64,000 bases of DNA, from assembly GCF_006345805.1 (NCBI RefSeq), contig NC_043002.1, positions 110,112,001 to 110,176,000 of the forward strand, in the 5' to 3' direction. A program made the position numbers and the translations under genes. Shown here piece by piece: positions 5,816 to 62,248 of the stretch. The notes under the pieces were generated by a model. The model saw nothing but the letters and a program-made list of their open reading frames with translations, was not told the DNA's origin and searched no databases. Position 1 is the first letter of the stretch. Every line of letters starts with the position of its first letter. The DNA is from Octopus sinensis (lineage: Eukaryota).

Positions 5816-6590
5816 GACACTTGATTCCCAGTTAATTCAGTCCCTGGATGATAAATTCCATGAAGGAAGCTTTGTCATTCATAGTTGAAAGCAGCAGGTA
5901 GATTATATATGTGGTTTACTAACTTGTATAGCTGAGCTTAATATCTTCACCTTCATGCATTTTGAGAGGGCAATGGGTACTCATCCTAGTATATCACCTA
6001 CCAAATCTCCCCTTAAGTATAGTTTCTATGAAATCCCAGCAACTGAAGTAAAACTAGTGATATTGTGATATTGTCTTCATAGTATGTTTCAGTTTAGTAT
6101 TCATATGGTTTTTGATTGTTTGGTTAATACACAGAGAATAGTGGTGAAAGAAATTAACAGCTATTCTTTTATAATTAGTGTATATGCTAAATATGATGCT
6201 GCATTGATGTTAGCTGATAGTAATTGAATATTTAATAGAGGTATTGGTGTTCTACATCTTCTTACATATCCAATACCACACTTTGGGAATTAAAAATTAA
6301 GTAAAATGTCACTTTCCCAATTCAGAATAACTGACACAAAAGGACTTGTGTGCATACATGCTTACATGTATGTATACGTGTGCATGTACATGCATGTTTA
6401 CATACATATATCAGATATATATATGCATGTATACACACATAAATACAAACATACTATATATATACATTCATGCACACACCTGCTTACATTTATACATATA
6501 TAGATACATGTATCCATACACACATACACATGCAACTTAATAATTCATGAACCTTTTGTGATTGTCAGCAACTCAATAAATAGCACTTAC

Positions 6591-6652
6591 CGATTTCAGT
6601 AAATCCTGGACAACACTTGACACATTTTTGTTTTTTCAGATAATATTTAGTA
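6591..6652 (-). CDS. Gene 1 exon 8: EMI-like C-terminal part (62 nt, phase 2-1)
   Basis: ttctatttcaag/GTAAGT; (C)TKYYLKKQKCVKCCPGFTEI; CCPGF resembles the CCxG[WYF] motif of EMI domains. Confidence 0.8.
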
Positions 6653-6742
6653 CTTGAAATAGAAGAAGAAATCTTTTAGTCATTGTACTGTCAAAATATA
6701 TAATGATGATGAGGATGATGATGAGGATGATAATGATGATTA

Positions 6743-7164
6743 TACTCTTTACTCTTTACTCTTTTACTTGTTTCAGTCATTTGACTGCGGCCATGCTGGA
6801 GCACCGCCTTTAGTCGAGCAAATCGACCACGGGACTTATTCTTTGTAAGCCCAGTACTTATTCTATCAGTCTCTTTTGCCGAACCGCTAAGTGACGGGGA
6901 CGTAAATACACCAGCATTGGTTGTCAAGCAATGCTAGGGGGACAAACAGACACACAAGCACCCACACACATACATATATATATATATATACACATATATA
7001 CGACAGGCTTCTTTCAGTTTCCGTCTACCAAATCCACTCACAATGCATTGGTCGGCCTGGAGCTATAGCAGAAGACACTTGCCCAAGGTCCCATGCAGTG
7101 GGACTGAACCCGGAACCATGTGGTTGGTTAGTAAGCTACTTACCACACAGCCACTCCTGCGCCT
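6743..7164 (-). mobile_element. SINE family B
   Basis: High identity to 3038-3449. Confidence 0.9.
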
Positions 7165-7727
7165 ATTATGATGATGATTCTTGTCATTTGTCACAATGAG
7201 GATGAATGAGGGGACGAACAGTGAGAGATTACAAAAACTGACGGTTTACATGAAAAACAAAAATATAAGGAATTTACAATATGGAACATCCAATCAGAGA
7301 ACAGCCACATAGAGCAAACTGAATACAGCCACAAATACATGTTTACCCTAACCACCAAAGGCAAGTACCCTCTCCTAGCCATCTTCTCTGTCCTACAGCT
7401 GGATGCTGAAAGTAGATTCATTCATGCAGGCCGTTCTTGTCACTCATGCATCTTCTTGCAAATTTACAGTAAGAAAGCAACTTGCCCAAGGTGCCACGCA
7501 GTGGGACTGAACCCGGAACCATGTGGTTGGTAAGCAAATCCCTATTCGCCTTCTCTTAGTAGAACTCGAAGAATTTGATGAAGTTTTGGCTGAAGAGGAA
7601 TGAGTTTGTCTTCGGGGGTTTTTAATGTTGTCTGCCAATCTTTTGCTAGGGTACTAGAAAGTGAAATTCTGTTTGCCGTTTCTGGTTGAAGATAAGTGGT
7701 GGAGCAATCCTCACAATAGTTGCAACT

Positions 7728-9079
7728 GATGGCCAGATGTCTCCTAAACATCTCAACAGCTGTCAGCTGCCTCTGCCCAAGCTTTCGAGGACAATTTCCC
7801 TTCACCCTATTTCTGGGTGACACTGGCCAGACTAAGCATGCAATTTGCAAAAGTTCAGAAAGGTAGCCTTTTAGGCTGACCATTGGGCTATACAACGAAA
7901 TGATCTAGCTTCTGCTATATATTAATGAATGGTGAGCTGGCAGAACCGTTAGCATGCCGGGCGAAATGCGTAGCCGTATTTCGTCTACCATTACGTTCTG
8001 AGTTCAAATTCCGCCGAGGTCGACTTTGCCTTTCATCCTTTCGGGGTCGATGAATTAAGTATCAGTTACGCACTGGGGTCGATATAATCGACTTAAATTC
8101 GTTTGTCTGTTCTTGTTTGTCTCCTCTATGTTTAGCCCCTTGTGGGTAGTAAAGAAACATATATATTAATGAACATTATTATAGACAGTTGCTAATGCTG
8201 GTGATCAGTGCATAGAGTTTGATTAGATAGTATAACTAGCATGATGAATGCCCTTCCAATCATGGCTGTGTGGTTATGATACTTGTTTTGCAATCACCAC
8301 ATGGATTAGAGTTCCATTAAAGTGCATGGAAGTCATGGGCAAATCAATGCTTTGTTAGTGAAATTTGGTTGACGGAAAAAGTAAAGAAGCTTATCATGTA
8401 TATCTACATTTATATCCATCTATTTCTTTAAATGTGTGTGTGCATGCACATACAAAGCATTGATTTGCCCATGACTGCCATGCACTTTAATGGAACTCTA
8501 ATCCATATGGTGATTGCAAAACAAGTATCATAACCACACAGCCATGATTGGAAGGGCATTCATCATGCTAGTTATACTATCTAATCAAACTCTATGCACT
8601 GATCACCAGCATTAGCAACTGTCTATAATAATGTTCATTAATATATATGTTTCTTTACTACCCACAAGGGGCTAAACATAGAGGAGACAAACAAGAACAG
8701 ACAAATGAATTTAAGTCGATTATATCGACCCCAGTGCGTAACTGGTACTTAATTCATCGACCCCGAAAGGATGAAAGGCAAAGTCGACCTCGGCGGAATT
8801 TGAACTCAGAACGTAATGGTAGACGAAATACGGCTACGCATTTCGCCCGGCATGCTAACGGTTCTGCCAGCTCACCATTCATTAATATATAGCAGAAGCT
8901 AGATCCTTTCGTTGTATAGCCCAATGGTCAGCCTAAAAGGCTACCTTTCTGAACTTTTGCAAATTGCATGCTTAGTCTGGCCAGTGTCACCCAGAAATAG
9001 GGTGAAGGGAAATTGTCCTCGAAAGCTTGGGCAGAGGTAGCTGACAGCTGTTGTGATGTTTAGGAGACATCTGGCCATC
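7728..9079. repeat. Long inverted duplication, 628-bp arms, 96-bp spacer
   Basis: 7728-8355 is the reverse complement of 8452-9079; I counted 7 substitutions (not exhaustive). Confidence 0.95.
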
Positions 9080-9576
9080 TTTGTTTTCATATATCTTCAC
9101 ATTATCGCTGTTTGAGTAGCTGCACCTTTGTTTATGCCTTCTATAAGATAAAGTGTTTTGGAGGCCAAATGCTTGGCTGGTTTCTTGGAATGCAAATAAG
9201 TTTCGGTTTCAGGGAAGGCATCCAGCCAGTGGCCATTCCATGTCACATAGAAAAAGCAAACATAAAAATGATGATGAAGATGATTACACATTTAATGAAC
9301 AATATGGTGAGAATGGAAACTTTAGTGACCCAATTGTTGTTTTTCAGCCAAAGGTGTCAGCTCTGATCAAACAGACCAAAGACGTATCAGCTGTGACCAT
9401 CTTGTCTTTGATTTTTAAGGCATAAAGTAATTAAGGCTCTATTAACTGATGCAGCCTTCTCTTTTAAAGATGGTAGGGTGTGAGTTGAGAGTGTTTAACT
9501 ATTCTTTCTGGTTGGTTATGTAACTTCTTTGTTGGCTCATCCCATGACCTAGTTTCATCATTCCATTGTAGCTCTT

Positions 9577-9955
9577 TACTCTTTTAATTGTTTCATTTGA
9601 CTGTGGCCATGCTGGAGCACCGCCTTTAGTCGAGCAAATTGACCCCAGGACTTATTCTTTGTAAGCCTAGTACTTATTCTATCGGTCTCTTTTGCCGAAC
9701 TGCTAAGTTACGGGGATGTAAACGCACCAGCATCGGTTGTCAAGCAATGTTGGGGGGGGGCAAACAGAAACACATAAACACACACACATATACATATATA
9801 TATACATATACATATATACGACGGGCTTCTTTCAGTTTCCGTCTAGCAAATCCACTCAGAAGTCTTTGGTTGGCCCAAGGCTATAATAGAAGACACTTGC
9901 CCGGAACCCTGTGGCTGGTAAGCAAGCTACTTACCACACAGCCACTCCTACGCCT
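9577..9955 (-). mobile_element. SINE family B (internal deletion)
   Basis: Identity to family B. Confidence 0.88.
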
Positions 9956-10536
9956 ATTCATCATTACTACTTATTTTGATAATATTTTTGAGAACCTCTA
10001 AGAAAAGCATGAATGTCATTCTATTTCATCATATTTTTATTGATTTTTGAGTAAAAATATCAATAAATAAAACTCCAAAATACAGTTTCTATATTTTCAA
10101 AAATGAAACATTATTAATTAGGGTTCATAATTATACTTAATTGCTATGATCATAATGAGTTTATTTAACTTATACCACAAATATTTTTCAAATTTGCTTC
10201 AGGAAACTAGTGAATAACTTGATTCAGTGCAGCTTGTGTTACTTGGTTTACTTTCTTTAGGTAATTCTAGATATTTTGAACGTTAAAAATGAGTGGTTAC
10301 AAAATTTATATTTTAGTGCATTATCCTCATCATAATCATTGCTTTCATTTTAAAATCTGATTCTTCTGCAAGTATTGTTTTCTTCCTTTCTTCTATAGAT
10401 TCCTAATATTTTTCTTGCTTTTGAATATGACATAAGATGGGTAAGTTTGTAAATTTCAATATTTACCAGTGTTCATGTAACAAGTTTTGTATTTTTATAG
10501 CTGCATAAAATACTACATAGTAGTATTTAATAATAA

Positions 10537-15650: not shown

Positions 15651-16259
15651 CTGCACAATAAGTAGATGAAACATTAAAGTACCACCAGAAACAATTAAGC
15701 AAACCCTTCCAACAAAGCAAATAAAAAGCCGCACGCAATTCCGCACCCTCTCTCAAAAGACTATATTTCACACACCTCAGGAACGGATGATGCACATGAA
15801 AATGCAATAGAAACTCTCACAAAATTGTTACAATAAATTACAGTAAAATATGAGATGGTTTGAAAGAAACAATCTCATAGTTTTTTGATGTCAAGTCATA
15901 GCCAAATGAGAATAGGTCTACAGGCATGACAGAATTGGAGCATTAGAATGACACCACCAGCATTATGAAACCCACCACCACCACCACCACCAATTTCATC
16001 TATGCATGTATATATATATATATATATTGCTAAACCTCGCTAAGATATTTCAATTAACCTGAAGATTGACTGTAACCATAACTCGAATTATTACGAATTG
16101 GACAGCCATGAAACGATCGTAGTGTTTTACTCATTATCTTTTATTAAACTTTTAATACTTTTGATATATATTTAAAATAATATAAATTAATTAATTTTAT
16201 GTATTGGCTTAAGTTTTTCATTGTTTGATTTGCCTAATAGTGGTTTTATCTCTAATTTA

Positions 16260-16668
<409 letters not shown>

Positions 16669-17839
16669 ATATATGCGACTGGTTGTATGGTTCTATAGGC
16701 CTATATGCATGTGTGAATGGATGGGTCTACACAAATATGTACAATATTTTGTCCTGTTTACTCAGTACTTAAAAATATTAAATGTGGTTCCCTACCCATC
16801 TATATTACTTCATTTCAAGTGAATATCATATATATTCATGCAGACGTATTTATGTGTGTGCATCTTAGTAAATATGTAAATGTAAACATTTTCAGTGTAT
16901 ATGACGATTTTGTCAATAAAGCTGACTGTTATTTCAGTGACAATAGAACATAATGAGCTAATGTAGTTTTTAAAGAAATATTTCCTTTCAATTTCAATAG
17001 AAAGCTTTGTTGACTGTTAGCAAGCACAATGTCTTTTGTATTGCATTTAAAATAACACAAAGAAAGTATTCAAGTGGCAGTTATTTGAAATGTAAAAATA
17101 TCATTATCTTTCCATGGAAAAGGCATGGGAAAATGTAGAGACAAGTTACTTTAATGGGGATACTAATAACAGCTCTCAGGTAGAAAGAGTGGCGTCCAAC
17201 TTGAGCAAGTATAGCATCTCAACAATTGGAAGATAAATGCACTCTGTAGCATGGTTGTTCTTCTAGCCTTTACTCTTGACAAAAAAAAAGGAAATGATTC
17301 ATATAATTTCATTAAAAATATTTTCCTTAAAAAATATTACACATTTAAATGTCATATCTAATTTTTTATTTGGTTGAAATGTTTGGCTTATTCATTTTCT
17401 GATGAAAAAAAAACTCTTTGCTTTGTAACCAAGACGATAAGTAAATCTTTATACAATCACTCATTCTACTAGAAGTAACATTTAAATCTCTTTCAAATCA
17501 CTGTGTAGTCACAGATGCAAAAAATGGGATAGGAGGATTACAGTTAGAATATGTTTAATCATAGTTTTGATTGTTCTCTAGTGCTGACCTGAGGCTGAAT
17601 ATCAAAAACAAGAATAACAAAAACAACACAAATAGCAACAGTAACAATTACAACAACAACAACTCTGTTTTTTTTTCTTATTGTATAAACTACAGATAAA
17701 CAAAAGCCCAAGGACGTGAACCATGTTATTCTTGAAAATGGACTAAATTCGAACATAGATCTAGACTTGGCCATCAATGTGACAGTGCTAACAATAACAA
17801 CAACGACGACAATGATAATAGTCACTGAGTTAGGCACAT

Positions 17840-18260: not shown

Positions 18261-18489
18261 CAATTTTTCACTTTGTACTCTCCTGGATTAGCTCCTGAAG
18301 CACAGAAATTCACTTCTGTCTCAAAAAATTCTCCTAACTACATTTTTTTTCTAGGAATAATGATGAGTTAAAAAATTCTGTTTGTTCATTTTTTGCATGT
18401 ATTCAAACAATAATTTCATTTAGTAATGTTTTAATAAATCATGTCTCAGAAAGAAAGGGCAAACCATGTTTTCACACTAAGAGAATCAA

Positions 18490-18571
18490 ATAATAATGAT
18501 AATGATGATGATGATGATGATGATGATTGATGATGATGATGATGATGACGATGATGATGATGATGATGATA

Positions 18572-18612
<41 letters not shown>

Positions 18613-18681
18613 AATGATGATGATGATGACGATGATGATGATGATGATGATAATGATGATGATGATGATGATGATGATGAT

Positions 18682-18729
<48 letters not shown>

Positions 18730-18747
18730 CGACGACGATGATGATGA
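18490..18747. repeat. (GAT)n microsatellite, ~260 bp
   Basis: Direct reading; source of the poly-D/M/H ORFs. Confidence 0.97.
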
Positions 18748-19270: not shown

Positions 19271-19684
19271 TTACTCTTTACTCTCTTTTACTCTTTTACT
19301 TGTTTCAGTCATTTGACTGCGGCCATGCTGGAGCACCGCCTTTAGTCAAGCAACTCGACCCCGGGACTTATTCTTTTTGTAAGCCCAGTACTTATTCTAT
19401 CGGTCTCTTTTGCTGAACCGCTAAGTAACGGGGACGTAAACACACCAGCATCGGTTGTCAAGCAATGCTAGGGAGACAAACACAGACACACAAACACACA
19501 CACACATATATACATATATACAATGGGCTTCTTTCAGTTTCCGTCTACCAAATCCACTCACAAGGCTTTGGTCGGCCCGAGGCTATAGTAGAAGACACTT
19601 GCCCAAGGTGCCACACAGTGGGACTGAACCCGGAACCATGTGGTTGGTAAACAAGCTACTTACCACACAGCCACTCCTGCGCCT
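19271..19684 (-). mobile_element. SINE family B
   Basis: Identity to family B. Confidence 0.9.
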
Positions 19685-20693: not shown

Positions 20694-20789
20694 AAGGTTT
20701 GAGGACACACCATAAAGGCATTGTGAGGGCATCTCATTATCTTTACACCAAGTTTTGTTAATCTTTTGGTACAAGTATATGAACATTTT
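20694..20789 (-). CDS. Gene 1 exon 6: Cys-rich exon (96 nt, phase 2-2)
   Basis: tattttcattttcag/GTAAGC; (I)KCSYTCTKRLTKLGVKIMRCPHNAFMVCPQT(L), open only in the frame the chain requires. Confidence 0.75.
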
Positions 20790-35693: not shown

Positions 35694-38600
35694 GGTAAGT
35701 ATTTCATAAAGGACCCGTTCATACCTTGGTTTGAAATAATATTTTTTCTACAGGTTTTTTGTGTACATTCAACATAGCAGACCTCCAAACTCACTGCAGA
35801 AAACAAAGTGGGAAGGGGTGGTTGGGACCTCGGAATTTCCCACCAATGGAGTTTTGTTTCACAGGTTTTTTCGCCAGGTTATTTCACATGCTTTCAACAA
35901 ATGTGACATTGAAAAGGAAAGATTTGGCTGCTATTTCTTGCACTCTGTGCTACCACATAACAGCTATTTGTGATAAAGTACCCGTCAATATTTCACTGTG
36001 AAAACATCAAGATGGGGAAGATGTGAGATTCGTTGAAAGTATGCGTTGAGTTCCTTCGTTCGCATGGAGTATTACCAAAAATAGTGATATGTCCATATTG
36101 TAGCAATGAATGTATTTATTGAGAAGACAAACATTTATGATGGTGTAGAAGAAATCATGTCATTCCTAAAGAAAAGACGCTTTTGTAACTATCCTGTTTT
36201 CAATTTCAAAAGTTTGTTTTTGGACAATGTTCACATTCCTTCATGGAAAGTTATGCTTTTTGTAAACCAATTTGCGAGTCACTTATGGGACCATAAAGTG
36301 GTGGAAAATGCCTGAAAATGCCCATAAAGAGCACCACGGATTGGTGATCGTTTTGTAGCGAAGTGAAGGACATGAGGTTTACACAGTAGTGGTTTTGGTG
36401 TGGAAGTGGAGTTCTACGAAACTTTGATTGTTCAAAGAAAATATGTAGAGGGTTGACTTCTGAGCAAAATTTGGTTGTTTGGTGGAATCAAATGAGCAAT
36501 TAAATGCTTGTAGTAAAAAGCATTTTAGCAAAGTATTTTTGAATGGAAATAAACTAGAGTTGGTTTGTAAGAAAATTCTTTCGGCAGTAATTTGCTAGTA
36601 AAGCAAATTTAATTTGAACAGACTCATTTTATTGGTTGAAAAATATACTAGCCAAAGCTGTCCTGGTTTTTGACCAAAATTATTCCAAAAGATTGTTTCT
36701 GGACGCTTCTAGAAGTTTCCAATGAAGGTTATAAAAACCACAATTTTTCCATGTTTTTTAGTGACATTTACAATATCCTCATGAGGCTATGTCACTCACA
36801 GCCTTGTGTGCCATGTAGTGTTGAAATGTCTGACATTAGTGTAATAGATGCGGCATTATTCTATGTTATGACCTTATCATTTATCTAAACTTTTTCCATA
36901 GAATACTTTGATGGATTAGTTAAGGAATTTTAAGAAAAACTTCTGCCACCCCTCATTTTCTCCCAAATTTGTTTATTTAAAAAATTTTTTTTGCCGAAAA
37001 CCCCCATTTTCGGATACGGCGGTTCCGGAAAATTGCCAAAAATCGGCATTGTGAAATTTTTTTCCCCCTTCCCCCAGTTAAATTCTTCAATTTTGAGTTT
37101 TTTCCCCAACACTAACCCTAACCATAACTACATAAATGCTTTGAAATTTTTGTCCGAATCATGATGTATGTATTTTCCCACATATTTAGAACAAAAAAAA
37201 AATTCTTAAAAAAGTTTTGGAAATATTTTTCATAAATTTTTTTCATAAATCTCCGTATTTTTTGCATATTTAATAAAAAAAAAAAAGCATTTCTGAAAAA
37301 AGTAAAAAAATGAAGGAAATGTGGTAATTTAAAAATGCCAATTTTTGCCAATGTTTTAGCAGATTCATATTCCTTGTAGCTGAAAAGGGGAGGGTTTGTG
37401 TTGAAACAAAAAGATTTAAAAGAAAGGGTGGTTTTTGGTGGGGAGGGGGCAGAAGTTTTGCAAAATTTTATTCTTGTCATCTCTTCACGACTAGTTATCT
37501 TTAGGAAAAAAAAAACTAGAATATATTGACTTGGCTTACTCTTCAAGAGTGAACGAAGGGAGATTACTCCTGATATATATATATATTTTGCAATTGTACT
37601 TATTTATCTCTGTAGAATAAAAGAAGTATTCACCAAAATAATGCGACTCTGATCTTTTGCATTTGATAATGCTTGTTCTATTAACTACTTCAAGTTGCAA
37701 GAGAAAGCCATAAAAGAAAAAGATTTGTATGTGACATACAACGTATCTATACAACATATTCAGTTTGCAATCAAAACCTTGTGGAGCTGTTGCACCAAGA
37801 CATGTTTTCTACTTAAATTAACTGTCCTGATAGTTGAACTGCTAACCCCTAGACAACTAGAACAGTTGAACTGACAACCAGAACTCATCTATTTAGTTCA
37901 GTTAATTATTGCAAATTATCTGGCAGTGTTTCTACAGCTGGATGCCCTTCCTAACGCCAACCACTCCGTGAGTGTAGTGGGTGCTTTTTACGTGCCACCG
38001 GCACAGGTGCCAAGGGAGGCTGACATCATCCACGATTGGTTGGTGCTTTTAACGTGCCACCAGCACAGAAGCCAGCTAAGGCGGCGCTGGCATCACCCAC
38101 GTTCGGATGGTGCTTTTTATGTGCCACTGTCTGGCTTCTGTGCCGGTGGCACATAAAAAGCACCATCCGAACGTGGCCGATGCCAGCGTCGCCTTCGCTG
38201 GCTTCCATGCCGGTGGCACGTTAAAAGCACCAACCGATCGTGGCCAATGCCAGTCTCCCCTGGTACCTGTGCTGGTGGCACGTAAAAAGCACCCACTACA
38301 CTCGTGGAGTGGTTGGCGTTAGGAAGGGCATCCAGCTGTAGAAACACTGCCAGATCAGACTGGAGCCTGGTGCAGCCCCTGGCTTCCCAGACCCCGGTCG
38401 AACCGTCCAACCCGTGCTAGCGCGGAAAACGGACATTAAACGATGATGATGATGATGAATTGTTACAAATTTACAAGGAAAGAAGTGTGACAGCACCACA
38501 CGTGTTCCTCTCATTCAACAATATATTAAACCTGGGAGTATAGTGTGTAGTGATACCTGGCCAACCTACAAGTACTTAAATTCTTTAGGTTATCAGTTTT

Positions 38601-49624: not shown

Positions 49625-52244
49625 AGGGCTATTAGACAAAAGAAACAGGCTTGGAAGGACTGGAAGAACGGTGGTAGCAGGGAAGTGTATCAGACTGCAA
49701 GAAGGGAAGCTAGGAGGCAGGTTTATTTAGCCAGAGGGGAAGCAGATAGGAAAAAATTTGCCAATGTCCTGCGCCGTGAGGATGAAAGACTTGAGGTATT
49801 TCGTATAGCAAGACAGTGTGTGAGAGAGAATCGTGACGTGGTAGGAGAAAAATGTGTTCGCACGGATGACGGCTCACTTGCGCTAAATGAGGATGCAAAG
49901 AGAGAGGTTTGGAGTAGCCACTATGAAAGGTTGCTGAATGAGGAAAATGAATGGGATAAAGAGAGTTTGCCGAATGTTGACCCAACAGAGGGACCAGCAA
50001 TCTGAGTTGACAGTTCCTTAGTAGATAAGGCAATTAAAAGCATGAAAACAGGGAAAGCCCCAGGCCCATCAGGAATTACTGCAGAGATGCTCAAAATATC
50101 TGGTAGTGTCGGCTATAGCCTAGTCACCCGTATAGTTAACCAGGTGATACACGAAGGAGTCATTCCCAATGACTGGTGTAGCAGCATAATAGTCAGCTGC
50201 TACAAAGGTAAAGGTGACGCCCTAGATACAAATAACTACAGGGGTATCAAGCTGCTGGATCAGGTAATGAAGGTTACGGAGAGGGTTATAGCCCAACTAA
50301 TTAGAGAGAGAGTTAGCCTAGATCAGATGCAGTTTGGGTTCGTGCCAGGGAAAAGTACTACTGATGCTATTTTCATGGTAAGACAGCTGCAAGAGAAATA
50401 CCTAGCCAAAGACAAGCCCCTATACCTGGCTTTTGTTGAAATGGAGAAAGCCTTCGACAGGGTCCCCCGATCCCTCATCTGGTGGTCAATGAGGAAACTA
50501 GGGATAGAGGAATGGTTAGTGAGAGCTGTACAAGCCATGTACAGAGACGCTGCTAGTAAGGTGAGGGTTGGCACCGAGTACAGTGAAGAATTCAGGGTAG
50601 AGGTTGGGGTCCACCAAGGTTCAGTCCTCAGTCCCCTCCTATTTATCATAGTCCTCCAGGCAATAACGGAGGAATTCAAGACAGGATGCCCCTGGGAGCT
50701 CCTCTATGCTGATGACCTTGCTCTAATTGCTGAGTCTCAATCAGAACTAGAGGAGAAAGTTTCTGGTATGGAAACAAGGTTTAGAATCGAAGGGCCTTAG
50801 CATCAACCTAGCCAAAACCAAAGTCCTAATAAGTAGGAAGGTAGACCAATCACAAACGCCTTCAGGTAGATGGCCCTGCTCGATCTGTAGAAAAGGTGTA
50901 GGTAGAAACTCTATAAGATGCACCAAGTGTAAGCTATGGACACATAAGAGGTGCAGCAATGTCAAAGGAAGGCTAACTAGGAAGATGGTTTTTTGTATGT
51001 GGCAGATGCTCAGGAACAATTAACACTGAAAATGCTCTGAGACCAACTTCCGTCACTTTCCAGGGAGAAAAGCTAGAAGTAGTTGATAGTTTCCGTTACC
51101 TAGGTGACCAAGTCAGTAGCGGGGGCGGGTGCGCTGAAAGTATAACTGCTAGAGTAAGAATAGCCTGGGCAAAGTTTAGAGAGCTCTTACCCCTGCTGGT
51201 GACAAAAGGCCTCTCGCTCAAAGTAAAAGGCAGACTGTATGATGCATGTGTACGTACAGCCATGCTACATGGTAGTGAAACTTGGGCTGTGACTGCTGAG
51301 GATTTGCGTAAGCTCGCAAGAAATGAAGCTAGTATGCTCCAATGGATGTGTAACATCAGTGTTCATAATCGACAGAGTGTAAGTACCTTGAGAGAAAAGT
51401 TGAACCTAAGAAGCATCAGTTGTTGTGTGCAAGAGAGACGTATGCGCTGGTATGGTCATGTGATGAGAATGGGTGAAGATAGTTGTGTGCGAAAGTGCCA
51501 CACCCTGGCAGTTGAGGGGACCTGTGGAAGAGGTAGACCCAGGAAAACCTGGGTCGAGGCGGTGAAGCACGACCTTCGAACTTTAGGTCTCACCAAGGAA
51601 ATGACCAGTGACCGAGACCTTTGGAGGTATGCTGTGCGTGAGAAAACCCGGCAAGACCAGTGAGAACAGTCAAAATCAAGATCAAACCAAATTGAGGTTG
51701 ATCAACATCAGGGCCCCCGTGCAGGTGACACGTAAAAGTACCATCCGTTCGTAGCCGTTTGCCAGCCCTGTCTGGCCCCCATGTCGGTGGCACGTAAAAG
51801 CACCATCCGTTCGTGTTCGTTGCCAGCCTGGCCTGGCCCCCGTGCCGGTGACACGTAAAAGCACCATCCGTTTGTGGCCGTTTGCCAGCTCTGTCTGGCC
51901 CCCGTGCCGGTGACACGTAAAAGCACCATCCGTTTGTGGCCATTTGCCAGCCCTGTCTGGCCACATGTCAGTGACATGTAAAAGCACCATCTGTTCATGT
52001 CCGTTTGCCAGCCCTGTCTGGCCCCCATGTCGGTGACACGTAAAGCACCATCCGTTCGTGTCCGTTGCCAGCCTCGCCTGGCCCCGTGCCGGTGACACGT
52101 AAAAGCACCATCCGTTCATGGCCGTTTGCCAGCCCTGTCTGGCCCCCGTGTCGGTGGCATGTAAAAGCACCATCTGTTCGTGGCCGTTTGCCAGCTCTGT
52201 CTGGCCCCCGTGCCGGTGACACGTAAAAGCACCATCCGTTCGTG
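49625..52244 (+). mobile_element. RTE family 1 LINE, 5'-truncated, disrupted RT plus tandem-repeat 3' UTR
   Basis: KAPGPSG, NYRGIKLL, QFGFVPGKSTTDAIF, GVHQGSVLSPLLF, LLYADDL; stops and frameshifts between ORFs 49685, 50042 and 51199. Confidence 0.95.
51727..52244 (+). repeat. ~61-bp tandem array (about 9 units) running into the gap
   Basis: Unit gacacgtaaaagcaccatccgtt.gtggccgtttgccagc.ctgtctggcccccgtgccggt. Confidence 0.92.
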
Positions 52245-52344
52245 NNNNNNNNNNNNNNNNNNNNNNNNNNNNNNNNNNNNNNNNNNNNNNNNNNNNNNNN
52301 NNNNNNNNNNNNNNNNNNNNNNNNNNNNNNNNNNNNNNNNNNNN
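52245..52344. other. Assembly gap (100 N)
   Basis: N run directly after the 61-bp tandem array. Confidence 1.
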
Positions 52345-56082: not shown

Positions 56083-56630
56083 CAGCAATCAATTGTTTTT
56101 TTTTTTTAAGTCATCTTAAAAAAGAAAGGACACATAAGAAATGTAGTGTAATACATACAAAGAGATGAGTTGGTTACAGTTAGGACAACTTCGATTACAG
56201 ACCTACATGATTAGGGCCGCCCTGTGGCTAAAACCAACAGCAAGGACCTATCAAGTACTTGAATATTCAATAGATTATACTTTGTCTGCTATTTTTAGCA
56301 TGTCGAGCGACCAGGTAGAGGCTGTTTTATTGGTTTGATTGCGTGTCAATGGACTCAGAAGTTGTTGTTCGGAAACAGCAGCAGTATTTTTCTTCAGGTG
56401 AATACACGTCATTGATTGGTTAAAATTACCCAAATATGACAACTTTAACATGAAATAACTGCTAAAATACAAAATTTTGTCAAAAACGTTAAGAGTAAGC
56501 CCTGTTCTATGTGACACATTCTACCAGTACATCTGAAACATTAAAAGTTCTGTCAATCCTCCAAAAATTCTACTGCACTGAGTACCTAATAATATGTTCC
56601 TACTAATTCTTTCATCTATATCCAGCAAGT

Positions 56631-57001: not shown

Positions 57002-57476
57002 CTGAAATAGACAGATTAATAATTTATAAACAAAATCTTGCTATTTTTTCAGTATATTTTATTTTTACTAATTATATGTATATTTGCTAATTATACGTTT
57101 GGTAGTCAAACCTTTGATCATGCAATCACATACAGGCTTCATCGTTGGTCTGTCTCAGTAATAATTTTGTTGTTAATTAGCCTCAAATCAACCCTGATAC
57201 AGCAAACCTATCATAAATGACATTCCAGCCTTCAGCAAACCATCTTTTTAGGGATAATCTTGGACATTACATACAATGGGCATGTGATTTAGGTAGGGGG
57301 ATACTTTGTCTGCTATTTTTAGCATGTCGAGCAACCAGGTAGAGGCTCTTTTATTGGTTTGATTGTGTGTCAATGGACTCAGAAGTTGTTGTTCGGAAAC
57401 AGCAGCAGTATTTTTCTTCAGCTGAATACACGTCATTGATTGGTTAAAATTACCCAAATATGACAACTTTAACATG

Positions 57477-57480
<4 letters not shown>

Positions 57481-61863: not shown

Positions 61864-62248
61864 CTCTTACTCTTTACTCTTTTACTTGTTTCAGTCATTT
61901 GACTGCGGCCATGCTGGAGCACCGCCTTTAGTCGAGCAAATCGACCCCAAGACTTATTCTTTGTAAGCCCAGTACTTATTCTATCGGTCTCTTTTGCCGA
62001 ACCGCTAAGTGACGGGGACATAAACACACCAGCATCGGTTGTCAAGCAAACACAGACACACAAACACACACACATACATATATATACATATATACGACAG
62101 GCTTCTTTCAGTTTCCGTCTACCAAATCCACTCACAAGGCATTGGTCGGCCCGGGGTTATAGCAGAAGACACTTGCCCAAGATGCCACGCAGTGGGACTG
62201 AACCCGGAACCATGTGGTTGGTTAGCAAGCTACTTACCACACAGCCAC
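61864..62248 (-). mobile_element. SINE family B
   Basis: Identity to family B. Confidence 0.9.

What the first reader, a model, noticed from the sequence alone, without database searches (positions are those of the whole stretch)
7728..9079. 628-bp, ~99% identical inverted duplication inside intron 7
Seen: arms 7728-8355 and 8452-9079 with a 96-bp spacer; each arm includes a SINE C and non-SINE sequence. The left arm continues seamlessly outward into a LINE-like fragment and inward into an old SINE B running through the spacer, while the right arm stops abruptly at both ends. Inference: the right arm is a recent template-switch copy. Transcription would yield a ~630-bp dsRNA, a strong ADAR or Dicer substrate in a lineage known for extensive A-to-I editing.
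Basis: partly seen in the sequence, partly recalled or inferred. Interest (0 to 1): 0.7.

Follow-up and report, generated by a model that had tools for sequence, protein, structure and literature searches.

The report
Young inverted duplication in octopus intron
One octopus lineage copied 0.6 kb of an intron backwards next to itself while repairing or replicating DNA, which left a long hairpin-forming repeat that two related octopus species lack; it is a very clean example of a known kind of mutation, not a new kind of element.

Summary
Arms 7728-8355 and 8452-9079 are 628 nt long, differ by 7 substitutions and no indels, and are separated by a 96-nt spacer.

The orthologous loci of Octopus vulgaris and O. 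bimaculoides both have only left arm + spacer. This is followed by 14 nt (TTTGTGTGTGCAAG) that the window lacks, and then by the window's right flank. That is an empty site in two outgroups.

The junctions look like fold-back (snap-back) template switching:
- The old 3' end CACATACA (8447-8454) can pair 6/8 with TGTTAGTG (8353-8360), with the last 3 nt exact.
- The far junction shares 2 nt (TC).
- There is no target-site duplication and no tail.

Each arm carries its own derived substitutions (3 left, 4 right), so the right arm is not a copy of today's left arm.

- The host gene (EGF-like, minus strand) places the repeat in intron 2 of the only available model, not intron 7.
- The "LINE-like" flank has no support.

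The RNA is predicted to form a 628-bp duplex (-1226 kcal/mol). Editing or dicing of it is untested. An assembly artefact is unlikely but cannot be excluded without reads. This is a new member of a known kind, of moderate interest.

The parts
7728..8355 (+). Left arm: the ancestral template segment (203 nt single-copy + SINE-C + 182 nt that includes the 3' part of an old SINE-A copy)
   Evidence: Contiguous with both of its flanks in O. vulgaris (window 7532-8454 = L001 47893-46969, 98.2%) and in O. bimaculoides.
8356..8451 (+). Spacer, the loop of the fold-back. It is unduplicated ancestral sequence and continues the old SINE-A copy.
   Evidence: Present once in both outgroups, directly after the left arm. 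The SINE-A consensus alignment runs through 8355/8356.
8353..8360 (+). TGTTAGTG: the upstream partner of the inverted microhomology, where the folded-back 3' end primed
   Evidence: Pairs 6/8 with 8447-8454, with the 3 terminal pairs exact. The chance of at least 3 exact and at least 6/8 is 0.004.
8447..8454 (+). CACATACA: the ancestral 3' end that folded back. 8452-8454 (ACA) is shared between the ancestral sequence and the copy.
   Evidence: The O. vulgaris alignment continues to 8454 while the repeat starts at 8452.
8452..9079 (-). Right arm: the derived inverted copy. The strictly new DNA is 8455-9077 (623 nt).
   Evidence: Absent at the orthologous site of O. vulgaris and O. bimaculoides. 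It matches only the single left-arm copy there, in reverse orientation (98.6%).
9078..9079 (+). TC: 2-nt microhomology at the capture junction. In the outgroups, 14 nt (TTTGTGTGTGCAAG) lie between ACA and TC; the window lacks them.
   Evidence: Three-way alignment.
7931..8160 (+). SINE-C insertion inside the left arm, flanked by a 13-nt target-site duplication ATATATTAATGAA (7917-7929 and 8161-8173). It was copied together with its duplication into the right arm (about 8647-8876).
   Evidence: Present in O. vulgaris and absent at the orthologous site of O. bimaculoides. Family copies in the window.
8263..8442 (-). Old, 5'-truncated SINE-A copy (consensus positions 408 to 211). Its internal (TG)n/(TA)n tract borders the break site.
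   Evidence: No SINE-A 5' half lies beyond the right arm.
6591..6652 (-). Exon 3 of the host EGF-like gene (minus strand). Its acceptor lies ~1.07 kb downstream of the repeat in the direction of transcription.
   Evidence: tblastn of O. vulgaris protein P0001 gives 100% identity, and the intron boundaries are GT-AG.
20694..20771 (-). Exon 2 of the host gene. Intron 2 (20693 to 6653, about 14 kb) contains the repeat.

Best explanation
This is a real, lineage-specific fold-back (snap-back) inverted duplication.

Origin. In an ancestor of the window's species, after its split from O. vulgaris, a break or a stalled fork arose in the TG-rich tract of an old SINE-A copy, just right of position 8454. 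The free 3' end ...CACATACA folded back about 90 nt and paired with TGTTAGTG (8353-8360) on the same strand, or on the equivalent lagging-strand template. It was then extended for about 625 nt, copying 8352 down to 7728. The new strand was released and joined to the other side of the break through a 2-nt overlap (TC), with loss of 14 nt. The product is left arm - 96-nt loop - inverted right arm. The geometry, the empty site and the microhomologies are shown; the enzymology and the break-versus-fork distinction are inferred.

Consequence. The repeat sits in intron 2 of an EGF-like-domain gene transcribed from the minus strand. The pre-mRNA is therefore predicted to contain a 628-bp near-perfect intramolecular duplex, 1.07 kb upstream of exon 3. 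It is most likely a neutral by-product. If the gene is expressed, the duplex should be promiscuously A-to-I edited by ADAR in the nucleus and degraded with the intron. The fold is computed; editing is inferred from known ADAR behaviour.
For: (1) Empty site in two outgroups. In O. vulgaris, L001 47893-46969 = window 7532-8454 and L001 46954 onward = window 9078 onward, with only 14 nt between them. O. bimaculoides L002 has the same arrangement and the same 14 nt.

(2) The right arm matches only the single left-arm ortholog, in reverse orientation.

(3) Junctions. The inner junction has 3 nt exact and 6/8 inverted microhomology (chance 0.02 and 0.004). The outer junction shares 2 nt and has a 14-nt deletion. 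This is the architecture shown experimentally for fold-back insertions at yeast breaks: imperfect inverted microhomology, a loop, Pol delta synthesis, and capture of the second end with 0-5 nt overlap (PMC11724301). It also matches the spacer plus inverted microhomology found in human inverted duplications (PMC3907307).

(4) The left arm plus spacer are contiguous in an old SINE-A copy that the right arm truncates.

(5) The arm carries a SINE-C together with its own target-site duplication and 385 nt of non-SINE-C sequence. The unit copied was therefore local genomic DNA.

(6) Polarised with O. vulgaris, O. bimaculoides and the SINE-C family, 3 changes are derived in the left arm and 4 in the right arm. 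All are substitutions, none in homopolymers.

(7) The RNA fold has a minimum free energy of -1226 kcal/mol, with the whole arm paired apart from 7 single mismatches.

(8) Host gene mapping with canonical splice sites.
Against: - No reads, and no second assembly of the window's own species, could be examined. The window's species could not even be identified. The structure therefore rests on one assembly.
- The arm divergence (1.1%) equals the heterozygosity reported for O. vulgaris (1.22%, PMC10700109). The differences could reflect a copy templated on another allele, or some haplotype mix-up, rather than age.
- The gene model is transferred from O. vulgaris. Expression of the intron, editing and small RNAs are all untested.
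- A break cannot be distinguished from a stalled fork.
Confidence: 0.85

Rival explanations
1. Assembly or sequencing artefact: a chimeric fold-back read, or the two haplotypes stitched together in opposite orientation, so that the right arm does not exist in the animal.
For: - The structure is seen in one assembly only.
- It is absent from two other species, as an artefact would also be.
- The arm divergence of 1.1% is close to the heterozygosity reported for a sister species (1.22%, PMC10700109).
- Inverted chimeras made in vitro also use microhomology (my own knowledge).
Against: - The copy returns precisely to the correct downstream flank after 623 nt, with a 14-nt loss. That needs two independent novel junctions. 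A missed-adapter or duplex-type read would carry on as the reverse complement and never return.
- The whole 1.35-kb structure is shorter than a long read, so a minority chimeric read should be out-voted in the consensus (inference).
- A single-molecule artefact would give identical arms. Here 3 sites are derived in the left arm while the right arm keeps the ancestral base.
- Neither haplotype of a simple inversion heterozygote contains a spacer-to-inverted-arm junction (reasoning).
- There is no gap nearby; the only N run is at 52245-52344.
Confidence: 0.08
2. A mobile element: a foldback or MITE-like transposon with 628-nt terminal inverted repeats, or two independent SINE insertions in opposite orientation.
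For: The ends are perfect inverted repeats and each arm contains a SINE. A palindromic multi-copy repeat family does exist elsewhere in the window (37918-38355).
Against: - There is no target-site duplication; instead 14 nt are deleted.
- The non-SINE parts of the arms are single-copy in the window, in 100 kb of O. vulgaris and in 85 kb of O. bimaculoides.
- The outgroups hold half of the 'element' (left arm plus spacer) in place, which an insertion cannot explain.
- Both arms share the same SINE-C target-site duplication and the same 385 nt of flank, so they are not independent insertions.
Confidence: 0.01
3. The inverted repeat is ancestral, and the right arm was deleted independently in O. 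vulgaris and O. bimaculoides.
For: Long inverted repeats with short spacers are deletion-prone (established knowledge).
Against: - Two independent deletions would both have to restore the same 14-nt sequence TTTGTGTGTGCAAG in place of the arm.
- O. bimaculoides lacks the SINE-C that both arms contain, so the duplication must postdate the split from O. bimaculoides.
- The arms differ by 1.1%, against about 10% divergence from O. bimaculoides.
Confidence: 0.01
4. Same origin, but the hairpin is functional and retained by selection. It could be a source of endogenous small RNAs (like Drosophila hairpin-RNA loci), or an intronic ADAR-recruiting 'editing inducer' for the neighbouring exon.
For: - The repeat has persisted long enough for each arm to collect 3-4 substitutions without losing register.
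- It lies 1.07 kb upstream of exon 3 of a transcribed-strand gene.
- Octopus shows exceptionally high hyper-editing, tied to long near-perfect dsRNA (PMC5625713).
Against: - No RNA data were examined.
- Substitutions have accumulated at about the neutral rate, and all 7 break pairing rather than preserve it. There are no compensatory changes.
- The structure is absent from the sister species.
- The Rfam matches at the hairpin tip are far below threshold: mir-2831 at 39 bits against a gathering score of 90.
Confidence: 0.05

Closest known systems
[quoted passage not shown]
   Same: - Imperfect inverted microhomology next to the break (here 6/8; 10 nt imperfect in yeast).
- A single-stranded loop (86-96 nt here; 41 nt in yeast).
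- Synthesis along the same strand.
- Release and capture by the other end with 0-5 nt overlap (here 2 nt).
- The result is a longer inverted repeat with an unduplicated spacer.
   Different: The copied tract is about 625 nt, whereas the yeast events ranged from 2 to about 150 nt and were mostly under 14 nt. This is a germline event fixed or segregating in a wild animal lineage, inferred from comparative sequence and not from genetics. Dependence on Pol delta or end joining is untested.
Human constitutional inverted duplications formed by fold-back (Hermetz et al. 2014, PMC3907307)
   Same: A normal-copy spacer lies between the direct and inverted copies, and 2-8 nt of inverted microhomology lies at the spacer/inversion boundary.
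   Different: The human cases are kilobases to megabases long, have spacers of 0.8-70 kb, go through a dicentric chromosome and end in terminal deletions. This one is interstitial, 0.6 kb long, and rejoins its own flank with only 14 nt lost.
Short-range template-switch mutations that create hairpins (PMC5453318, PMC7954356, PMC8794818)
   Same: A replication or repair strand switch copies nearby sequence in reverse complement and creates a perfect stem in one step. It is detected by comparison with outgroup species.
   Different: My understanding, from the titles, the abstract openings and my own knowledge, is that those events are far shorter, mostly tens of nucleotides; I did not read those papers for their sizes. 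This stem is 628 bp, in the range of long dsRNA rather than a microRNA-like hairpin.
Inverted SINE pairs in introns as ADAR hyper-editing substrates (PMC5625713 for Metazoa, including Octopus bimaculoides)
   Same: A long, near-perfect intramolecular duplex within one pre-mRNA that includes SINE sequence.
   Different: Here the duplex does not come from two independent SINE insertions (typically 75-93% alike in this window) but from a local duplication. It is therefore much longer and more perfect (628 bp, 98.9%) and includes non-repeat sequence. Editing was not tested.
Hairpin-RNA (endo-siRNA) loci of Drosophila, and plant microRNA genes born by inverted duplication (from my own knowledge, not checked in the library)
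   Same: A young inverted duplication gives a long hairpin transcript.
   Different: There is no evidence of small RNAs or of a target gene. The duplicated sequence is intronic repeat-rich DNA, not a copy of a gene.

Membership tests
Fold-back / microhomology-mediated template-switch inverted duplication | An inverted copy lies next to its template, separated by an unduplicated spacer | tested here: met
   Arms 7728-8355 / 8452-9079 with spacer 8356-8451. The spacer is single-copy in the outgroups.
Fold-back / microhomology-mediated template-switch inverted duplication | The ancestral state lacks the inverted copy (empty site in relatives) | tested here: met
   O. vulgaris L001 and O. bimaculoides L002 both have left arm + spacer + 14 nt + right flank.
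Fold-back / microhomology-mediated template-switch inverted duplication | [quoted passage not shown] | tested here: met
   ACA exact; CACATACA versus TGTTAGTG pairs 6/8. Chance is 0.02 and 0.004.
Fold-back / microhomology-mediated template-switch inverted duplication | The second junction is made by end joining: 0-5 nt overlap, small loss, no target-site duplication, no poly(A) | tested here: met
   TC overlap, 14 nt lost, no duplication of flank.
Fold-back / microhomology-mediated template-switch inverted duplication | The structure is present on single DNA molecules of the organism (not an artefact) | not testable with these tools
   No reads are available. Exact-ORF look-ups in public assemblies found nothing.
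Foldback transposon / MITE | Target-site duplication flanking the terminal inverted repeats | tested here: not met
   The flanks are ...GCAACT and TTTGTT.... The outgroups show a 14-nt deletion instead.
Foldback transposon / MITE | Multiple dispersed copies of the unit | tested here: not met
   The non-SINE arm parts are single-copy in the window and in the 100-kb and 85-kb orthologous loci. The whole genome was not searchable.
Inverted pair of independent SINE insertions | Similarity is confined to the SINE, and each copy has its own target-site duplication | tested here: not met
   Identity extends 203 nt and 182 nt beyond the SINE. Both arms carry the same 13-nt duplication ATATATTAATGAA.
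ADAR hyper-editing substrate (long intramolecular dsRNA in a pre-mRNA) | Long near-perfect duplex predicted within one transcription unit | tested here: met
   Fold of -1226 kcal/mol with 628 bp paired. It lies inside intron 2 of the EGF-like gene model, mapped with GT-AG boundaries. The gene model is transferred from O. vulgaris.
ADAR hyper-editing substrate (long intramolecular dsRNA in a pre-mRNA) | Clusters of A-to-G mismatches in RNA reads from the locus | not testable with these tools
   No RNA-seq access.
Hairpin-RNA / endo-siRNA locus | Phased or abundant 20-23-nt small RNAs from both arms | not testable with these tools
   No small-RNA data. The Rfam microRNA hits at the hairpin tip are far below threshold.

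The most novel reading that the evidence does not exclude
Fold-back duplications like this one may be a recurrent source, separate from transposon insertions, of very long and near-perfect intronic dsRNA in octopus genomes. This particular hairpin may be retained because it recruits ADAR to, or alters the splicing of, the adjacent exon of an EGF-like gene, or because it yields endogenous small RNAs. It would then be a species-specific regulatory novelty less than about 2.5 million years old.
Probability: 0.07. Interest if true: 0.6.

Novelty: new member of a known kind. Interest (0 to 1): 0.38.

Why it matters
This is an unusually legible natural example of fold-back template switching. Both junctions, the microhomologies, the lost 14 nt and the ancestral state in two outgroups can all be read directly, and the tract (about 625 nt) is several times longer than in the yeast assays.

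It also shows that long perfect dsRNA-forming structures in cephalopod introns can arise in a single mutational step from local DNA, not only from pairs of transposon insertions. If the host gene is expressed, this gives a dated, lineage-specific hairpin. With carriers and non-carriers (sister species or individuals), one could ask how ADAR and the small-RNA machinery of a heavily editing animal treat a brand-new 628-bp duplex. By itself it changes no current view.

Tried and rejected
- Exact-protein look-ups of window ORFs that span or adjoin the junctions, or lie within 3 kb of the repeat (7542-7895-, 4788-5468-, 9112-9366+, 9153-9425+), aiming to find independent assemblies of the same species. 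Nothing is on record.
- A homology search with the 226-aa transposon ORF, to identify the window's species. The best hit is 68% identical and unnamed.
- A test of whether the 5' half of the old SINE-A resumes beyond the right arm, which would have made the arm a clean insertion into the SINE. It does not; the score is no better than shuffles. The SINE copy was already 5'-truncated, and the outgroups confirm this.
- 'LINE-like' left flank: no Pfam match in five open frames and no other copy in the window.
- Rfam and tRNA scans of 6500-10500: only sub-threshold microRNA-model hits at the hairpin tip, as any hairpin would give, and no tRNA.
- The idea that the 57-nt SINE-A patch at 7482-7538 and the inverted duplication came from one multi-switch event. 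This cannot be supported, because indels of at least 15 nt relative to O. vulgaris occur about once per 1.6 kb here.
- Dating the event from the arm divergence. I left this as a range, because the heterozygosity of the sister species (1.22%) is as large as the arm divergence.

Full report

Yes. The repeat finder reports arms 7728-8360 / 8447-9079 (633 nt, 99% complementary).
- arms 7728-8355 and 8452-9079, 628 nt each;
- 7 substitutions, no indels;
- a 96-nt spacer, 8356-8451.

It is the only inverted repeat longer than 213 nt in the window. No other repeat pair of at least 150 nt in the window exceeds 97.8% identity. The only N run is far away, at 52245-52344.

**2. Anatomy of an arm**

Self-comparison divides the left arm into three parts:
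- 203 nt of single-copy sequence (7728-7930);
- 182 nt more (8174-8355).

An old, 5'-truncated copy lies on the minus strand from about 8263 to 8442 (consensus positions 408 to 211). It runs without a break across the left arm's inner edge (8355/8356) into the spacer. The right arm contains only the part up to that edge. Its missing 5' half does not resume beyond the right arm.

For the outer edge, the continuity is right (see section 4), but the label 'LINE-like' has no support. There is no Pfam match in any open frame and no other copy in the window.

**3. Organism and host gene**

Four calcium-binding EGF-like exons lie on the minus strand. A protein search with them found Octopus vulgaris 'epidermal growth factor-like domains 6 isoform X1' (P0001, 255 aa). 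Its exons map to the window's minus strand at:
- about 45177-45106;
- 20771-20694;
- 6652-6591;
- 2896-2777;
- 923-804.

All of these show 97.5-100% identity, and the intron boundaries I inspected are GT-AG. The repeat therefore lies in intron 2 of that model (20693 to 6653, about 14 kb). It sits about 1.07 kb upstream of the exon 3 acceptor in the direction of transcription.

The window is not the O. vulgaris assembly. Against OX597819.1 (GCA_951406725.2, locus L001) the orthologous blocks are 94-98% identical. Substitution divergence is mostly 1.4-3.7% per block, typically about 2.2%. Against O. bimaculoides (CM046606.1, locus L002) identity is about 90%.

The window thus comes from a close relative of O. 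vulgaris. O. sinensis is the obvious candidate; it is reported to have split from O. vulgaris about 2.5 million years ago (PMC10700109, citing Amor et al. 2019). I could not confirm the species.

**4. The decisive comparison: an empty site in two outgroups**

In O. vulgaris:
- window 7532-8454 aligns contiguously to L001 47893-46969 (98.2%);
- window 9078 onward aligns to L001 46954 onward;
- the right arm matches only the single left-arm ortholog, in reverse orientation (98.6%).

Between L001 46969 and 46954 lie 14 nt, TTTGTGTGTGCAAG, that the window lacks. O. bimaculoides has the same arrangement and the same 14 nt (window 8201-8452 = L002 60285-60034; window 9078 onward = L002 60017 onward).

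The states are therefore:
- ancestral: left arm - spacer - ACA - TTTGTGTGTGCAAG - TC - flank;
- window: left arm - spacer - ACA - [623 nt, the reverse complement of 7730-8352] - TC - flank.

The order of events can also be read. The old SINE-A copy is present in all three species. The SINE-C, with its 13-nt target-site duplication ATATATTAATGAA at 7917-7929 and 8161-8173, is present in O. vulgaris but absent at the orthologous site of O. bimaculoides. The inverted duplication is present in the window's lineage only.

**5. Mechanism**

The ancestral 3' end 8447-8454 (CACATACA) can pair antiparallel with 8353-8360 (TGTTAGTG) on the same strand. Six of the eight pairs form, and the three terminal pairs are exact. 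In random placements within this window, at least 3 exact pairs occur with probability 0.02, and at least 3 exact together with at least 6/8 with probability 0.004.

Extending that primer along the same strand from 8352 to 7728 produces exactly the right arm. The new strand then joins the other end with a 2-nt overlap (TC) and the loss of 14 nt. There is no target-site duplication and no tail.

This is the architecture shown experimentally for fold-back insertions at yeast double-strand breaks: imperfect inverted microhomology next to the break, a loop, Pol delta synthesis, unwinding, and capture of the second end with 0-5 nt overlap (PMC11724301). It also matches the 'spacer plus inverted microhomology' signature of human inverted duplications (PMC3907307).

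A switch of the leading strand onto the lagging-strand template at a stalled fork would give the same product, and I cannot tell the two apart. The break site lies in the alternating TG/CA tract inside the old SINE-A copy. That such a tract favours stalling or breakage is my inference.

**6. Artefact or real?**

I could not examine reads, so this rests on argument.

Points against an artefact:
- The copy returns to the correct downstream flank after 623 nt. That needs two independent novel junctions, each with its own microhomology, plus a 14-nt loss. Missed-adapter or duplex-type chimeras do not return.
- The whole structure is shorter than a long read, so a minority chimera should be out-voted in the consensus.
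- The arms differ only by substitutions.
- Polarised with O. vulgaris, O. bimaculoides and the SINE-C family, 3 changes are derived in the left arm (7753, 8062, 8330) and 4 in the right arm (left-arm coordinates 7769, 7901, 8101, 8300). Another 2 arose in the window's lineage before the duplication (7821, 8052) and 3 on the O. vulgaris lineage. The right arm is therefore not a copy of the present left arm.

A caution: the 1.1% arm divergence equals the heterozygosity reported for O. vulgaris (1.22%, PMC10700109). The differences could mean an age of roughly half the species split. Alternatively they could mean a younger copy templated on a different allele. I rate an artefact at about 8%.

**7. 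Other rivals**

- A foldback transposon, or two independent SINE insertions, is excluded by the empty-site structure, the absence of a target-site duplication, the single-copy arm flanks and the shared SINE-C duplication.
- An ancestral repeat with two independent losses is excluded because both outgroups keep the same 14 nt, and because O. bimaculoides lacks the SINE-C that both arms carry.

**8. Consequence for RNA**

The minus-strand (sense) transcript of 7700-9110 is predicted to fold at -1226 kcal/mol. All 628 positions of the arms pair except for 7 single mismatches.

Long near-perfect intramolecular duplexes in pre-mRNAs are the main substrates of promiscuous ADAR editing across Metazoa. 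O. bimaculoides has one of the two highest hyper-editing signals measured (PMC5625713). Hyper-editing of this hairpin is therefore a sound prediction if the intron is transcribed, but neither expression, editing nor small RNAs could be tested here.

All 7 differences break pairing and none is compensatory. This fits neutral decay and gives no sign that selection is preserving the stem.

**9. Verdict**

- The intron number and the 'LINE-like' label are corrected.
- The dsRNA consequence is predicted but untested.

This is a new and very clean member of a known class of mutation, fold-back template-switch inverted duplication, not a new kind of element.

Noticed in passing
window 7482-7538: A 57-nt internal piece of SINE-A (consensus about 333-388, plus orientation) lies 190 nt left of the left arm and is absent from both O. 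vulgaris and O. bimaculoides. It has no SINE 3' end and no target-site duplication. Its entry and exit points share short similarity with the flank (AAGCAAC / AGACAC; AGCAA). It looks like a second, direct-orientation templated insertion. The best matching copies in the window are at 19597-19650 (1 mismatch) and 62171-62228 (2 mismatches); the copy 400 nt upstream has 2 mismatches in 52 nt. It need not be the same event as the duplication, because indels are frequent here.
   Followed up: partly
window 37918-38355: A 210-nt inverted repeat (91% complementary, 18-nt gap) built from a multi-copy family with internal ~60-nt tandem units (GGTGCTTTTTACGTGCCACC...). It is also present at the orthologous O. 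vulgaris site (98%), so it is older than the finding and of a different nature: a palindromic repeat family or a head-to-head pair.
   Followed up: partly
window 59116-58997, 57002-56883 and 56089-56018 (minus strand): Further EGF-like exon-like ORFs lie upstream of exon 1 of the mapped gene model and are not part of it. One has Tyr where the first Cys of the calcium-binding EGF motif should be (DKNEY...), so it may be a decayed exon or belong to an unannotated paralog. Nearby, 56277-56456 and 57301-57480 form a 97.8% direct repeat.
   Followed up: no
window 7931-8160; L002 62451-62532: The SINE-C in the left arm differs in presence between species. It is present, with a 13-nt target-site duplication, in the window and in O. 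vulgaris, and absent in O. bimaculoides. At this spot O. bimaculoides instead has 39 unrelated nt and, just beyond, a 2.1-kb insertion of its own (L002 60286-62450).
   Followed up: partly
window 45177-45175 (minus strand, codon 2 of exon 1): The window encodes MYQYNF... where the O. vulgaris protein has MSQYNF...; O. bimaculoides also has MYQ. Ser is therefore the O. vulgaris-specific state in the signal peptide.
   Followed up: no
window 52245-52344: A 100-N assembly gap sits inside a tract of tandem ~60-nt repeats next to reverse-transcriptase ORFs (50042-51663). This is the only gap in the window.
   Followed up: no
window 16250-16830 and 18446-18730: Long simple-sequence tracts: a TA/TATG-type microsatellite of about 0.5 kb that scores as inverted repeats, and an ATG/ATC-type trinucleotide tract.
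   Followed up: no
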